Numbered from the stretch's first letter, positions 1,714 through 10,700 are shown. The stretch: 64,000 bases of DNA from Haliotis rubra (GCF_003918875.1 NW_025767634.1:1054001-1118000), one strand, 5' to 3'. The notes: generated by a model from the sequence alone, not told the origin. Translations and numbers: made by a program.

Positions 1714-4700
1714 GTAAGTTGGATGGAGCCTGACTTTGATGGTGTAGATTCAAGCACTGAAATAGGGATAATAACCTTTAAAATATATACTTTATATATG
1801 CGTGAAATTTGGTGTTTAGTGTACCTGTTATACATATAAAACATCAGAAAAGGTTGGAAAAGACATTAAAAAAATATGTTACGCCTTAGATTGTGTAAAT
1901 TTGATGATTATTGTTGACAGGAAACAAATGTCAATTATATCAAAGCGATAGCAGCACAACTACAGTGATAGTCCCGACATTTCATGAGTTATCTTCCCAA
2001 AGATTAATGTGAGGTGTAGAGCTGTTCTGATAAACATTCAACCACACACTTGAATCCAGGCCTAGTGTTGTGTATTCAACAAATATATATGTATATAATA
2101 GCAGAAGTCCTCTAATTCCAGATGGTATCTGCTATAAACAGAGGGGTATGGAAATATTTTGAGTAATGTGGAAGAACTATTTTAGGTTATCTAACACAGA
2201 TAAGTGGAGGGAAATGAAAGCCATATTTTTAGCTGCACCAGCCAGTGGTTTCCACCATCTTCTTTCTAATGCTTGAAAGAAATTTTGCCAGAAATAAGAA
2301 TTTATCAGTGAAATCCAAGATAAGGTGTATGTTAGCACTGGGAAAGCCTATGCCTGTCCTGGATTCTTGTCATGTTTTGTAGCAGGGTTTCAGACTAAAG
2401 AAAATATACAGGTCTCTGAAGGAAATGCACTGTGACCAGTGCATAAATAATTCCTGTAATCAGGGAGATCAGCTTCCTTTAAGGGAATAGATTACCATTT
2501 GATGAATTACTTAATTACAAGGATATGTGTAGCTTATGAGGAAAATGAGTGTCTGAATTATTTGTGCTTTTATTATGATAATTAATTGTTGATAATTATT
2601 TGCATCAGCAAGGACTTACCGGTATTATATTGTAGATATTTGATTGAATTTTTGAACTTTTGGGGGAAACATTGTTCAAATTATGTTCCTTGAGTACACC
2701 ATGACTCTGAATGGAGTGAAATGTTTCTCATGCATTTAGTCACGGGTTTGCCTGATCCAGACCTGCATGCAGCTCCTGGAATATTGCTGCCACAAACTTG
2801 CTTATATTGACATCAGTGACCTTTGCCTGCACAGAACCAGTAGACACACCACTTATAAACCTCCAGTGACGTCACTCTATTGTTCTAGCGAGGCAGTATT
2901 TCTTGTCATATCCCGATGCCCCGTCGATTAGGGGGCATTACTTCAATATCGTCCCTCTGCCCGGGGATTTTCTGAGGAATAGCCCTTGACTTTGAATTAT
3001 TACTTGTTTTGAAGATTGATACGACTTTGTCTTCACTGAATGTGATCGTAAAATATGACTTCATTGAAAACTTCCAACATGTAGCGCCGACACCCGGTAT
3101 CGAACCCGCAACCCTTCGCTTACAAGCTTGGCTGTTTTATCCACTAGACTACGAAGGATCGCTGTGAAAAATGAGATTGTTTGTCGGCATGGACAGTGTG
3201 TTCCTCCCAAGACGGGTAGTGCGGGCAGCGCACATGCAGGGCACGGGTAGCGCGTGCAGAGCACGTGTATTGCGCGTGCAAGTCGAGGAGTCGGCTGCCA
3301 GTCTCATCCCAGTTGCTTTCAGCAGTAAATACCAAATATTGAAATTATATCTAAAGTATATCTTCGGTCGGTTTATAAGTTGAATAAAGCATGACCCTCG
3401 GCATTCCCTCGGGAAAACATCCTTACTTCTTTGTTATGCCCGAGGGTCATGCTTTATCCTATACGTAAGCCACGACAGAAGTGTGTGAGATGTTGAGTTC
3501 TATTTGAGCTCATGTTGAGTTGACATTCACACAATCAGCCTCTGATTTGTCATATCCATGTCTGAGATACCAGCTCGGGTATCATATCTCATTCTTGATA
3601 AAATCAAACCCCAAGAACCAGGTTCCAACATCACTCTCAAGAAAGATAAGATACTGTATGGATGACAACTTCTTTATTATATAATGGTGCGATGTTTCAG
3701 TATAGCTTCTTGCTTGACAATGGTATAAGAACCAATACTCAAACATTGCATCATGATATAATACAGAGGTTGTCATCCATAAAGTATGTTACCTTTCTTA
3801 TTATTCATCAAGTTCTAAAATGGCAATCAAACAGAACATGACTCTTGTTCATTTGAACACACAGTTCATATATTTAGATGAGAGGGTCATATGATGTGAA
3901 CTTGAGATTGTACTCTTTCAATGTCACCTGATATGGCTGGAATATTGCTAAAAGCGGCGTAAAACTAAACTCACTCACTCACTCTCTTTCAGTGGTGAAT
4001 CAGGAGCTGGTAAAACTGAAAACACAAAGAAAGTGATCCAGTATTTGGCCTATGTTGCTGCATCTAACCGCACCCAAAGGAGCTCCGTGTCCAACCTACA
4101 TGTGCCGGTAAGACTTTATGCATGGCTGCAGAATGGCGCCCCTTAGCGCTGGTATTGGATTGATGGCTTGTCCTTCCTTTATGTTACTCTTTGCATGTTG
4201 TCTGCATGGGTATTGCTTATATTGCATGTTTTAGTTGCCATTGTTTGTACACGAAATGGTTGGTCCTTAATAATCATAGTAGCTTTGTAGCAAGTTTGAA
4301 TTTAGAAAGGCACTGGAATATATAGTTTACTTGTTAATTCATATACCTTATGTTTGTGGTCTGATGTAAGAGTTTTAAGTTGAAGCAGTGAATAGTTGTG
4401 ACAATTCTTTGTTGGCCCTCTGTTATCATTTGTTGGTAATAGCTTAGGCCTCATTCCAAGTTATGTTGCACTAGGATATCTGAACTCTCAAGTCATACTT
4501 TAACATGGACAGTGATAGCTGTAGTGTTCGGGGTGCTTGGAGAATCAAAGTCTTGTATGTATACAGGATATGTACAGGAATTGGTTTGACTAACAGATCA
4601 AGTTGTCATGAAAAGGGTTCAGCTTTTGTGAATAATGTGTTGCTGTCTGCCAAGAGGGATCTTTCTGCTACAATTATTATATGCTTTGCTTGATCAAAAA

Positions 4701-7700: not shown

Positions 7701-10700
7701 TCTGTGAATCAAAACCATTTACAGTTCAAACATTTTTATGGATTTTTTTATTATAAAAAGAAAAAAAAAAAACAATTTAATTAATTTTCTTGTTGTGATT
7801 TTGAATTAATGCTTCTTAAAAACATTTTGTTTGCTATTTTACTCCAGCACTTAACATATTATATGCAAAGTGTGCTGTTGTATATGTAATCGATGGTGTA
7901 TTTCAATATGTAAGACTAACCTAATATTATCTCATTTCACCCTTTTGGAGTGTTTTCAGAGAATAAACTGTTTGCAGTTACAGAAATATCTTGTTAATGA
8001 CCTAAGGTTGTCATGTTATGTAAATGCTCTGTTGATTGTTTACTCCTGTATGGAAGTAGAGTAGATCTACCCTTAAATAGGCTTTGCTTTCAAAGAAAAG
8101 AAGAATGATTTTATTAGTTAGAATATCGTGAATTTGTTCTTTTGAGATTGAATCATGTTCAAGATTTCATACCACCTTTTCATTGTATCATACATGCATC
8201 GACCATTTTTTGGTTGTTACCTCTGACACTGAACAGCATCAAGCTGATATGTTTCATTTGTTTATTTTAGTGTTAATACTGTAACAACATAGATGACTTT
8301 AGTTATGCATTTACTAACTTTTTACAAAAGTTTTACTTATGGCCAGAAAAGTTTAGTTCCAACTTTCATATAGAGCTTATTGAAAGTTTTTTGCTGTTTT
8401 TTAGAAAATTGAAATATTATGGACTGTGGAGATATCCAAGTCTGAAAATGAAAAAAAAGTCACTCAAAACCTGATTCAATGAGTAATAAACATTATTTAC
8501 TTCTGTCATCAATTCCATATGATTGACAGTAGATGGATTCCAGTGTTGATGCAGCCCAGTATGTCAGAGTCTGTCATCCTGTTTTACTTGGTTTATTTCA
8601 TCTTTGTCATTGTCTTGAAGTTGTTGCATGTATCATCTTGCTTCATCTCATGCATGTGAATTCATTGTTGTCCCATTGCATTAGTATGGTCAGGTGCATT
8701 AAGCTGTGGTATTTAGAAACAGTATTTTATTTCATGGTTTTTCTTCAAGGTATATTCTACATGACTAATCTGGAAACACTATGGTTCATTTTTCATAGTT
8801 GAATTTTTTTTATCAGTGATGATTTAACCCTTTGCAAAATATTTGTACATGTGACATTATTGCATCATAAATTGATCAGTTCACATAGCTGTCATTGCTC
8901 ATTGTCTGATTACTGTGTGTTCGTCATTCCACCATCATATGCAACCATTTCCATTCATTGTTTTAGTTATTAGACCACCTCATTGTCACCGTAACCAATT
9001 CACTACATTTCCCATTGTATGTACCAGGAGCAGCCAGCTGTCCAGTAAATAACATTGCTCCAAATTGCATTTACTGGGGTCTCTTTTGAGTTTTAAAATA
9101 AATTTAAAAAATGACCTCTCATTTGGGTGCATTGGTCCCATATTCCTTAAAATCTTTTTCTCAACCTTCATTCCAAGAGAAAAATGATCGTATTTGAAGA
9201 AAGGTAAATGTTAAATAAACTTAAATTCTAAATGCAACATGTCATGTAAGTACTGTGTAGTGTACATTGGCTGCCCCATCCATTCCTCACCTCACCTCAC
9301 CTCACCTCACCTCACCATCACAGGTGCCCCTTCTCCTTCCTGTATCACATGTTAGTATGCATCGTTACAGGGGGAACTGGAGAACCAGCTGCTGCAGGCC
9401 AACCCCATCCTTGAGGCTTTCGGCAATGCCAAGACCATCAAGAACGACAACTCTTCTCGATTTGTAAGTTCAGTGTAGAATGTAATTACTAATTATATTT
9501 AAAAGTTTGTTGCTGTTATCAATGTAAGAAATGTTCCCCATGCCACAAAATTGGCATTTGAGCAAGTACTTTTCTATATATAAAAATGCTAAACTGCCAA
9601 AGCATAGCAAGCAATATCTTTTTCTGTCATCATGTAGCTTTGTGACTGTAGAGCCCTTTGGATATTTCAACAAGGTGGTATTAGTCCTCTGAAAAATTTA
9701 AGAAGATGTCAGCTCCAAACAAATGATATTTTGTAAATTTCCAAGAAAAACGATTTTATAATTCCTCTTTGAGTGATCAAACAGGTGAGAGCTGCAGATA
9801 TTTAATGACATCTTTGATCCTGTTTCAGGGCAAATTCATCAGAATCAACTTTGATTCATCTGGTTACATATCCGGTGCCAACATTGAAACATGTATCCTT
9901 TCATGTGAACAAGCTGATGGAGTTGCGCTGTGTTCAGAATACCAGAGTCCATTAATATGTTATAGGTGAACTTGGGTATAGTGGACCTTAAGTTCAAGCT
10001 GGGGTACCAGGGTCCTACCATACACTTGGGTACTGGGTTCATAACCTTGTGGCTAGATACAAGGCATCTAACCCCAAATCCTAAGGAATGGAAGGACCTG
10101 ACTGTCCAAACTGGATGTGCCAACTGGTTCAGCAATTGAGGCTGAAAGTCAAGGGATCTTAGTCTAAAGCCTAATGTCCTGTGAAGACCTGGGGTAGATT
10201 TGGTCTTCAGTAACCCATGCTTGTCCTAAGAGGCGACTAACAGGATCGGGGGGTATCCCAATTGAGTAGATTGATGCGCATGCTGTTGATCACTTGATTG
10301 TCTGGTCCAGACTTGATTAATCATAGACTGCCGCCATATAGCTGGAATATTGCTGAGTGCAGCATAAAACAACAAACCAACCAAAGCCAAATACAGTCAA
10401 ATCCCGATGAGTCGAATGCCGGTGTCTGGAATATTATGCATAACTCGAAGTACCTGTCGGTCCCGACCATTCCCTGTTATAGTTGTCATCATTTGAATAC
10501 CGGTTACACGAATTCGTCTCATAAATACACACGATGACTCGAGAAGGAAATTTGGTCCCATGAGATTCAAACAACAGCAATCTTGTATACATAAGCCGAA
10601 GTCAGTCAATGAGAAGTTGATTGGTGTAGCAAACTGATCCAATTAACGAACCAGCGCGGCTCACACCTTTCGCCATTGACGGGTGAGTTCAAAAGGCAGT

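What the first reader, a model, noticed from the sequence alone, without database searches (positions are those of the whole stretch)
4108..9370. Candidate Rbfox-regulated 18-nt microexon in myosin loop 1 (parallel to vertebrate MYH10 B1/N30)
Seen: cctag|AAC AAA GAG TTC AAC CTT|gtaagt at 6846-6863 is frame-preserving (NKEFNL) and has a consensus donor. It lies in the intron splitting loop 1. Four TGCATG motifs lie within 120 nt of the upstream donor, and others are at 6788, ~5638, ~5989, ~8625 and 8651. Known: loop-1 inserts in MYH10, MYH14 and MYH11 tune motor kinetics, and MYH10 N30 inclusion depends on UGCAUG/Rbfox. Inference: a conserved or convergent tissue-specific splice switch in an invertebrate myosin II, easily missed by annotation.
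Basis: partly seen in the sequence, partly recalled or inferred. Interest (0 to 1): 0.72.

Follow-up and report, generated by a model that had tools for sequence, protein, structure and literature searches.

The report
Real 18-letter myosin loop-1 microexon
The predicted 18-base exon in this invertebrate's non-muscle myosin II gene is genuinely spliced into mRNA and adds six conserved amino acids beside the motor's ATP pocket, at the spot where insect and vertebrate myosins also have optional mini-exons; control by the splicing factor Rbfox is plausible but unproven.

Summary
Observation confirmed. Window 6846-6863 (+) is ag|AACAAAGAGTTCAACCTT|gtaagt (NKEFNL). It lies in the phase-0 intron 4108-9370, between the P-loop exon (3993-4107) and the exon that starts [12 protein letters not shown] (9371-9463) of the genome's only non-muscle-type myosin II gene.

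The exon is real:
- A transcriptome contig of a sister species (run X29) joins the 18-mer to exon B exactly at the predicted donor.
- That species' intron differs at 3 of 231 bases around the exon, against 22 of 188 just downstream.
- Three other divergent myosin II transcripts carry KSDFNL, NKDINL or SKDINL directly before GELE.

Insects have annotated optional exons at the same intron and phase, including an 18-nt one that I located in a midge gene. Vertebrate MYH10, MYH11 and MYH14 have their known inserts there. Common origin is therefore more likely than convergence.

Sense-strand TGCATG is enriched in the intron (9 against 3.1 expected). Four copies lie within 121 nt of the upstream donor, and a pair lies 1.76 kb downstream of the exon. 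Dependence on Rbfox, tissue specificity and the kinetic effect were not tested. The midge introns have no TGCATG.

Verdict: a new member of a known kind, of moderate interest.

An earlier follow-up in this scan reported a tail-exon switch in the same gene. I did not re-test it.

The parts
3993..4107 (+). Exon A: P-loop, following helix and proximal loop 1 ([38 protein letters not shown]). It ends in phase 0 at donor CCG|gtaaga.
   Evidence: tblastn of insect NMII P0121. RNA contigs of X1 and X29 cover 3993-4106/4107, and the X29 contig ends exactly at 4107.
4119..4228 (+). Cluster of four sense-strand TGCATG (4119, 4192, 4203, 4223), 12-121 nt downstream of exon A's donor. Candidate Rbfox-binding cluster.
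   Evidence: positions. (0 of 2000 simulations give four copies in 120 nt). (single copy in the genome, so not a repeat element).
5760..5868 (+). Five GCATG cores within about 105 nt, three of them as GGCATGT. Possible further weak Rbfox-type sites. Significance was not tested.
   Evidence: GCATG positions in the intron; sequence.
6679..6909 (+). Conservation island around the microexon. Against sister species 'organism F' there are 3 differences in 231 nt here, none of them in 6799-6909. In 6910-7097 there are 22 substitutions plus indels in 188 nt.
   Evidence: tables 3, 4 and 8, X29 record 15. (Fisher P = 1e-5). (single copy in the genome).
6777..6793 (+). GCATG (6777) and TGCATG (6788), 53-69 nt upstream of the microexon's acceptor. 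Both are unchanged in organism F.
   Evidence: One search lists no differences between 6732 and 6797.
6846..6863 (+). The 18-nt phase-0 cassette microexon AACAAAGAGTTCAACCTT = NKEFNL. Acceptor is ...ctgttttctgttgtgggccacctag| and donor is |gtaagt.
   Evidence: sequence. (X29 contig joint 6864->9374 with GA between, which is 6863|9371 plus a synonymous G>A at 9373; the alignment stops at 6845). (KSDFNL, NKDINL and SKDINL in other species). (best-matching hexapeptide of 3606 in the intron and 92812 in the window).
8625..8656 (+). Pair of sense TGCATG (8625, 8651), 1.76 kb downstream of the microexon. The layout resembles the two-UGCAUG distal enhancer 1.5 kb downstream of human MYH10 exon N30.
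   Evidence: (single copy). (PMC3082911 for the human element). Conservation was not assessable.
9371..9463 (+). Exon B: [31 protein letters not shown] (end of loop 1 to switch 1). Acceptor is cag|GGG.
   Evidence: (X29 contig continues 9374-9400).

Best explanation
Window 6846-6863 is a genuine, evolutionarily conserved 18-nt cassette exon of the genome's single non-muscle-type myosin II heavy-chain gene.

Shown:
- It is spliced to exon B in mRNA of a sister species.
- Its flanks are a conservation island.
- The six residues it adds (NKEFNL) recur as x-[K/S]-[D/E]-[F/I]-N-L directly before GELE in other species' myosin II transcripts.
- The same phase-0 intron in insects holds annotated optional microexons.

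Inferred:
- Inclusion lengthens loop 1 at the mouth of the nucleotide pocket. As with vertebrate SM-B and B1, this should speed ADP release and raise ATPase and sliding velocity. One gene would thus yield a 'fast' and a 'slow' motor.
- The choice between inclusion and skipping is set by intronic (U)GCAUG elements read by an Rbfox-family protein. These are four copies just after exon A's donor, two just upstream of the microexon, and a pair 1.76 kb downstream.

My odds:
- Real spliced exon: 0.9.
- Alternative rather than constitutive: 0.8.
- Homologous to the insect and vertebrate loop-1 cassettes: 0.55.
- Rbfox-controlled: 0.4-0.45.
For: RNA:
- Run X29 is a sister species with about 6% intron divergence. 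One contig (depth 134) aligns to 6845-6864 and then jumps to 9374-9400, with 'GA' between.
- This reads ...AACAAAGAGTTCAACCTT|GGA GAA CTG..., which is the predicted 6863|9371 junction with a synonymous change at 9373.
- The alignment stops at the acceptor AG, although the species' intron contig is near-identical there. The contig therefore does not continue into the intron upstream.
- The 20 + 2 + 27 letters fit a 30+18+30 bubble path. The exon-A contig (depth 191) ends exactly at 4107.

Conservation:
- 3 of 231 differences in 6679-6909 against 22 of 188 in 6910-7097 (P = 1e-5).

Peptide:
- P0413 reads AASNRTTRQSVSNFQTVP-KSDFNL-GELENQ.
- L005/P0408 reads ...TTFQ-NKDINL-GELERQ.
- P0412 reads ...SNLQ-SKDINL-GELEQQ.
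- NKEFNL is the best match to these of all 3606 stop-free hexapeptides in the intron.

Same-site cassettes:
- Insect isoform pairs differ by GHTNFA, SSHQETFA, SHNAETFA or PNCNFA just before GELE.
- In the midge gene L001 the insert is an 18-nt phase-0 exon, ttag|GGACACACAAATTTTGCG|gtaagc, in the intron before GGT GAA TTG GAA.
- Vertebrate inserted forms appear. The human SM-B insert QGPSFAY and its effect on ADP release are described in PMC13102872.

Regulation:
- Sense TGCATG is 9 against 3.1 expected, and the four-copy cluster occurred in 0 of 2000 simulations.
- These regions are single copy in the genome.
- An Rbfox-like RRM exon has 88% identity over 33 residues.
- Human N30 depends on two UGCAUG 1.5 kb downstream (PMC3082911).
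Against: - Inclusion rests on one contig in one run of a sister species. No inclusion contig was laid for the three runs labelled as the same organism as the best DNA holders. Two of those runs showed no contigs on these exons at all, possibly because of a filter.
- The upstream junction 4107|6846 was not displayed.
- Skipping in X1 is inferred from depth accounting, not read directly.
- Run tissues are unknown, so there is no evidence of neural or muscle specificity.
- Conservation of the four-copy cluster and of the distal pair could not be checked.
- The midge introns hold no TGCATG, so Rbfox control is at best lineage-specific.
- Similarity to arthropod and vertebrate inserts is only a short motif (hydrophobic, then N/S/T/A, then hydrophobic) that I defined after seeing the data.
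- The kinetic effect is pure analogy.
Confidence: 0.6

Rival explanations
1. The microexon is real and alternative, but its inclusion is set by factors other than Rbfox. These could be general splice-site strength, other tissue factors, or elements in the conserved 170 nt upstream. The TGCATG clusters would then be unrelated to it, or would act on something else such as exon A's donor.
For: - The midge orthologue has the same 18-nt cassette and no TGCATG in the three loop-1 introns.
- The only motifs shown to be unchanged in the sister species lie inside an island that is conserved as a whole.
- The four-copy cluster sits next to the constitutive exon A, 2.6 kb from the microexon.
- No convincing long-range RNA pairing links the clusters to the exon.
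Against: - Sense-strand enrichment and clustering of TGCATG in this intron are well beyond chance. The sense to antisense count is 9 to 2.
- The two-site distal layout resembles the proven human N30 enhancer.
Confidence: 0.3
2. The exon is used in the sister species (organism F) but is silent or negligible in the window's own species.
For:: no inclusion contig was laid for X1, X31 or X32 (organism A). Depth in X1 over 6730-6921 is fully explained by one unspliced intronic contig.
Against: - The exon, both splice sites and 111 nt around them are letter-identical between the two species.
- The peptide is conserved in far more distant species.
- Contigs drop minor variants, and X31 and X32 showed no contigs on these exons at all.
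Confidence: 0.06
3. It is a chance pseudo-exon: an in-frame AG...GTAAGT accident in a 5.3-kb intron, and the RNA contig is an assembly artefact.
For: About six candidates of similar splice-signal quality exist in the intron. The joint has only 20 letters on its short side.
Against: - A 20-letter exact match ending precisely at the AG and at the GT, followed by exon B in frame, is not expected by chance in 5.7 kb.
- The conservation island and the matching peptide in three other species are independent of the contig.
Confidence: 0.03

Closest known systems
Vertebrate MYH10 (NM IIB) exon N30 / B1 insert
   Same: - The host is a non-muscle-type myosin II.
- It is a cassette microexon in loop 1, inserted directly before GELE(R)QLLQANP in phase 0 (P0001 against P0271).
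- The intron carries UGCAUG, including a pair about 1.5-1.8 kb downstream of the exon (PMC3082911).
   Different: - It is 30 nt and 10 residues (QESPKPVKHQ in P0001), with no sequence likeness to NKEFNL.
- Neural specificity and Fox/PSF dependence are demonstrated there and untested here.
- The window also has a four-copy cluster next to the upstream exon and two motifs just upstream of the microexon.
Vertebrate MYH11 SM-B insert (QGPSFAY) and MYH14 C1 insert (ASVSTMSY-type)
   Same: - Both add 7-8 residues at the same loop-1 site.
- Both end in hydrophobic, small or polar, then hydrophobic/aromatic (FAY, MSY), like FNL here.
- A longer loop 1 speeds ADP release (PMC13102872). This is the function inferred here.
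   Different: - These are different paralogues found only in vertebrates.
- The sequence likeness is confined to a three-residue pattern.
- Kinetics were measured there, not here.
Insect zipper / non-muscle myosin II loop-1 cassettes
   Same: - The gene is a single-copy invertebrate orthologue.
- Isoform pairs differ by 6-8 residues right before GELE (GHTNFA, SSHQETFA, SHNAETFA, PNCNFA).
- In Culicoides brevitarsis the insert is an 18-nt phase-0 exon in the intron preceding the GELE exon. Length, phase and position are identical to the window's exon.
   Different: - The peptides differ (...NFA or ...TFA against ...FNL).
- Insects have additional optional exons in the same loop. These are a 24-nt GPSPALII-type exon and a 40-residue exon in Drosophila melanogaster zipper isoform B (P0369).
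- There is no TGCATG in the midge introns.
Unnamed myosin II transcripts P0413 (marine eukaryote catalogue), L005/P0408 and P0412 (JGI metatranscriptomes)
   Same: - They carry KSDFNL, NKDINL or SKDINL directly before GELE.
- P0413 also shares the proximal loop (AASNRT.R.SVSN) and is 100% identical over exons B and C. These are probably the true orthologues of the microexon.
   Different: - Their organisms are unknown.
- They are cDNA-type contigs, so it is not shown that the six residues are a separate or optional exon there.

Membership tests
Loop-1 cassette exon of non-muscle/smooth-type myosin II (MYH10 B1, MYH14 C1, MYH11 SM-B, insect zipper microexons) | The host gene is a non-muscle-type class II myosin heavy chain. 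| tested here: met
   - tblastn of insect NMII P0121 covers residues 176-1925 along 3979-38507.
- There is a GELExQLLQANP / [16 protein letters not shown] signature.
- There is only one such gene in the genome. The muscle-type copies cluster elsewhere at 64-73% identity.
Loop-1 cassette exon of non-muscle/smooth-type myosin II (MYH10 B1, MYH14 C1, MYH11 SM-B, insect zipper microexons) | The exon lies in the phase-0 intron immediately upstream of the exon that begins GELE. Its length is a multiple of 3 and it has no stop. | tested here: met
   (window). (the midge gene has the same arrangement).
Loop-1 cassette exon of non-muscle/smooth-type myosin II (MYH10 B1, MYH14 C1, MYH11 SM-B, insect zipper microexons) | The exon is spliced into mature mRNA. 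| tested here: met
   X29 contig with the 6863|9371 junction, depth 134. It comes from a sister species, one contig, and only the downstream junction was displayed.
Loop-1 cassette exon of non-muscle/smooth-type myosin II (MYH10 B1, MYH14 C1, MYH11 SM-B, insect zipper microexons) | The exon is optional: both inserted and non-inserted mRNAs exist. | tested here: inconclusive
   
- The bubble-like 30+18+30 contig and the exon-A contig ending at 4107 imply a branch.
- In X1 the exon-A contig runs 30 letters on, and depth accounting places these on exon B.
- No skip junction was displayed directly.
Loop-1 cassette exon of non-muscle/smooth-type myosin II (MYH10 B1, MYH14 C1, MYH11 SM-B, insect zipper microexons) | The insert changes motor kinetics (ADP release, ATPase, velocity). 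| not testable with these tools
   Analogy only (PMC13102872; PMC3535348).
Rbfox-dependent alternative exon | (U)GCAUG in the flanking introns is above chance. | tested here: met
   9 against 3.1 expected (P = 0.003), and four copies in 120 nt in 0 of 2000 simulations; sense to antisense count is 9 to 2 in the intron.
Rbfox-dependent alternative exon | The motifs are conserved across species. | tested here: inconclusive
   - Motifs at 6777 and 6788 are unchanged in organism F, but they lie inside a generally conserved island.
- The cluster at 4119-4228 and the pair at 8625/8651 were not covered by that species' contigs.
- The midge has none.
Rbfox-dependent alternative exon | An Rbfox-family protein is encoded by the organism. 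| tested here: inconclusive
   - one exon at G000:C2265:329442-329540 matches the second half of the Rbfox RRM at 88% over 33 residues.
- The Pfam Fox-1_C search found nothing, and its controls were blank too.
Rbfox-dependent alternative exon | Inclusion changes with Rbfox level or with motif mutation, and follows Rbfox-expressing tissues. | not testable with these tools
   Run tissues are coded. No perturbation data exist.
SRRM4/eMIC-type neural microexon | A UGC motif lies between the polypyrimidine tract and the 3' splice site. | tested here: not met
   there is no TGC in 6796-6845. The nearest is inside TGCATG at 6788. The defining feature is from my own knowledge, not from a paper read here.

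The most novel reading that the evidence does not exclude
The loop-1 cassette of non-muscle/smooth-type myosin II is one ancestral bilaterian alternative microexon. It would be kept for more than 500 million years in molluscs, arthropods and vertebrates (MYH10/11/14), and it would encode a short segment that ends in hydrophobic, then N/S/T/A, then hydrophobic just before GELE. Its control by intronic UGCAUG/Rbfox, including a distal downstream pair like the human N30 enhancer, would be ancestral as well.
Probability: 0.2. Interest if true: 0.7.

Novelty: new member of a known kind. Interest (0 to 1): 0.5.

Why it matters
Loop 1 tunes how fast myosin II releases ADP. Vertebrates use optional mini-exons there to make faster smooth-muscle and neuronal or tumour isoforms.

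A lophotrochozoan with a single gene of this type uses an 18-nt exon at the identical intron, and insects do the same. This points to an old, shared way of making two motors from one gene. It also gives a simple single-gene system in which to test what the insert does.

It is a worked example of a real microexon that gene prediction from sequence alone would miss.

The unusually dense UGCAUG sites make a concrete, cheap test of whether Rbfox control of myosin II splicing predates vertebrates.

Tried and rejected
1. Splice-signal scan alone does not single out the candidate. About six similar candidates exist.

2. Word search with the 75-residue inclusion peptide found no near-identical fragment. 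The best was 75% identity. Transcript contigs break at the alternative site, so no short protein spans it.

3. Reaching full-length mollusc isoforms failed.
- The only full-length representative from the big search was an insect protein (P0121).
- Its region search returned only insects and other arthropods.
- A profile of P0121 plus window exon fragments was dropped because MAFFT misplaces most fragments.
- A nematode base (P0210) was rejected because it would have biased the ranking.
- I therefore could not check whether annotated isoforms of this species include the exon.

4. The look-up of encoding contigs gave nothing for Drosophila erecta P0355. It gave no DNA for Gryllus P0363 because the gene range is too long.

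5. Pfam Fox-1_C on the own genome was blank, and its controls were blank too. This is uninformative.

6. A search for long-range RNA pairing between the TGCATG clusters and the exon found only chance-level pairs. Arms 4391-4406 and 7088-7103 are 16 nt long, and one arm differs in organism F.

7. Literature searches found no paper in the held library on a loop-1 microexon of a non-insect invertebrate non-muscle myosin II. The 1996 paper on the Drosophila zipper gene (its title is listed) is not held, so I cite it only from the reference list.

8. Read laying gave no contigs on exons A and B for X31 and X32, although the index says they hold exon A. I read this as a filter effect, not as absence.

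
Full report
**What is in the sequence**

The + strand of the window from about 3979 to 38507 encodes residues 176-1925 of a non-muscle-type myosin II heavy chain. This comes from tblastn of the insect protein P0121. The first ~175 codons lie upstream of the window.

- Exon A (3993-4107) encodes [38 protein letters not shown] and ends on a full codon at CCG|gtaaga.
- Exon B (9371-9463) starts at cag|GGG GAA CTG and encodes [31 protein letters not shown].
- The 5263-nt intron between them therefore splits loop 1 in phase 0.

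The genome (1.38 Gb, 2855 contigs) holds only this one gene of the non-muscle type. A cluster of muscle-type copies lies on another contig. I did not test the taxon.

**Is the exon more than chance?**

By splice signals alone it is not. A simple scan finds about six frame-preserving AG...GT candidates with a donor of similar quality in this intron. Three independent lines of evidence lift it above chance.

*RNA.*
- In run X29 one contig of depth 134 aligns to 6845-6864, then skips to 9374-9400, with the two letters GA between. X29 is 'organism F', whose intronic contigs differ from the window by about 6%.
- Read out, this is ...G AACAAAGAGTTCAACCTT | GGA GAA CTG.... That is the microexon joined to exon B at the predicted GT-AG sites, with a synonymous G>A at 9373.
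- The alignment stops exactly at the acceptor AG. Yet the same species' unspliced intron contig (record 15) is nearly identical to the window there. The contig therefore does not run on into the intron upstream.
- The sizes (20 + 2 + 27 letters) are those of a 30+18+30 alternative path in a k = 31 assembly graph. The X29 contig covering exon A (depth 191) ends exactly at 4107.
- The upstream junction itself was among the rows not shown.
- In X1 ('organism A') the exon-A contig runs 30 letters beyond 4106. No contig other than an unspliced intronic one lies on 6846-6863, and there is extra depth on the start of exon B. The simplest reading is skipping, but that is inference from depth accounting.
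- X31 and X32 showed no contigs on either exon, although the index says they hold exon A. The tool warns that conserved genes can be filtered out.

*Local conservation.*
- The X29 intron contig covering 6679-7411 has 3 differences in 6679-6909. None of them falls in 6799-6909.
- It has 22 substitutions plus indels in 6910-7097. Fisher P = 1e-5.
- The island is single copy in the genome.

*The peptide.*
- A metatranscriptome contig found with the skip-form peptide (L005) encodes ...AASLKSQKQSASQALTTFQ-NKDINL-GELERQ....
- A search seeded with it returned P0412 with ...SNLQ-SKDINL-GELEQQ.
- It also returned P0413 with AASNRTTRQSVSNFQTVP-KSDFNL-GELENQ. The proximal loop of P0413 resembles the window's, and its exons B and C are 100% identical to it.
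- Scored against these three peptides, NKEFNL is the best of all 3606 stop-free hexapeptides in the intron and of 92812 in the whole window. The margin over the runners-up is small (23 against 22, 21 and 20).

Taken together, I put 0.9 on a genuine coding exon.

**The same site in other animals**

- The region search with the insect protein returned named isoform pairs that differ only by a short insert directly before GELE:
  - Culicoides brevitarsis X1 (...ALII-GHTNFA-GELE) against X2, which lacks the insert;
  - Drosophila erecta and D. mojavensis (SSHQETFA);
  - hoverflies and fruit flies (SHNAETFA, SNNAETFA);
  - a cricket (PNCNFA);
  - mosquitoes (GGHSSSLS).
- There is also a 40-residue exon in Drosophila melanogaster zipper isoform B.
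- In the Culicoides gene (L001) the insert is an 18-nt phase-0 exon, ttag|GGACACACAAATTTTGCG|gtaagc. It lies in the intron that precedes the exon starting GGT GAA TTG GAA. It is itself preceded by a 24-nt exon (GPSPALII) that some insect isoforms lack.
- Vertebrate inserted forms at the same place appear in my hits:
  - MYH10-B1-like QESPKPVKHQ;
  - MYH14-C1-like ASASTISY and ASVSTMSY;
  - 'myosin-10-like' SSGPVSY and NASITY.
- The human smooth-muscle SM-B insert is QGPSFAY (PMC13102872).
- Across phyla the residues just before GELE tend to read hydrophobic, then N/S/T/A, then hydrophobic (FNL, INL, LNF, LSF, FNI, FNM, FAY, MSY). I defined this pattern after seeing the data and it is short.
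- I therefore rate homology with the arthropod and vertebrate cassettes at about 0.55. Homology with KSDFNL, NKDINL and SKDINL I rate much higher.

**Regulation**

- TGCATG is not enriched in the window overall (74 against 67.6 expected).
- On the sense strand of this intron there are 9 against 3.1 expected (P = 0.003). Only 2 lie on the antisense strand.
- Four copies in 4119-4228 never occurred in 2000 simulations.
- The cluster and the distal pair at 8625/8651 are single copy, so they are not parts of a repeat.
- The distal pair lies 1.76 kb downstream of the microexon. The proven enhancer of human MYH10 exon N30 has two UGCAUG 1.5 kb downstream (PMC3082911).
- An Rbfox-like RRM exon is present in the genome. 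It matches at 88% over 33 residues.

Against the Rbfox reading:
- The only motifs shown to be unchanged in the sister species (6777, 6788) are 53-69 nt upstream of the exon. The usual Rbfox position rule (from my own knowledge) predicts repression there.
- The four-copy cluster sits beside the constitutive exon A.
- I found no convincing RNA pairing that would bring distant sites to the exon.
- The midge introns contain no TGCATG at all.

I give Rbfox control 0.4-0.45. The direction of any effect is open.

**Function**

Function is inferred only. Loop 1 borders the nucleotide pocket, and longer loop-1 variants release ADP faster. SM-B and B1 isoforms have higher activity (PMC13102872; PMC3535348). 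Six extra residues here would be expected to give a faster motor. The rough depth ratio in X29 (134 of 191) suggests inclusion can be the major form in some samples.

**Novelty**

- The kind is known: vertebrate B1, C1 and SM-B, and annotated insect isoforms.
- I found no paper in the held library that describes it for a mollusc or any non-insect invertebrate.
- I could not check whether the species' own annotated isoforms already include the exon.
- I file it as a new member of a known kind, of moderate interest. The deep conservation and the dense UGCAUG sites make an ancestral, testable splice switch plausible.
- An earlier follow-up of this scan (s1-335094) reports a smooth-muscle-like tail switch in the same gene. 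If both hold, this single gene carries both of the alternative events that define vertebrate smooth-muscle myosin isoforms. I did not re-test that note.

Noticed in passing
window 3929-3985 and 5308-5510: A SINE-like repeat. Thousands of transcriptome contigs pile up here, with bin depths of 10^4-10^5. The copy at 3929-3985 ends in (ctca)n-ctctttcag and so supplies the pyrimidine tract and acceptor of the constitutive P-loop exon at 3993.
   Followed up: partly
window ~14100-20400: A GC-rich block (0.52-0.57 against ~0.37 around it) lies inside a myosin intron. It has broken long ORFs and a reverse-transcriptase-like stretch (...[20 protein letters not shown]... at 17019-17228). It is probably a decayed retroelement. 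Four of its ORFs had no Pfam hit.
   Followed up: partly
L001 13600-16760 (Culicoides brevitarsis myosin II gene): Loop 1 is built from three small pieces. These are the end of the P-loop exon, a 24-nt exon (GPSPALII, 15791-15814) and the 18-nt optional exon (GHTNFA, 16084-16101). Some insect isoforms lack the 24-nt type as well (Hermetia X2, Schistocerca X2). Some copepod-like proteins carry a second insert (for example ...GGLNFQHDDEGGFSW before GELE).
   Followed up: partly
window 22628-23970: Five sense-strand TGCATG (22628, 22808, 23013, 23233, 23965) surround the exon at about 23684-23869 of the same gene. Whether this is a second regulated region was not examined.
   Followed up: no
window 48250-48702: A tandem array with a 51-bp period. 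Each unit carries a TGCATG (48366, 48417, 48468, 48519, 48570). It lies outside the myosin gene.
   Followed up: no
window 54500-56300, 58100-60100, 61400-62650: Three long minisatellite-like arrays give long repetitive open frames (for example ...INVQIYAS..., ...SISHTHLHPLPTE..., ...YETTCV...).
   Followed up: no
window 1-3990: No match to the first ~175 residues of myosin II. The 5' exons of the gene lie upstream of the window (G000:C2744 below 1054001).
   Followed up: no
G000:C2178:2474000-2764000: A cluster of at least a dozen muscle-type myosin heavy-chain exon copies (64-73% identity to the window's exon at 26660-26854), on both strands. Several have in-frame stops in the matched frame.
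   Followed up: no
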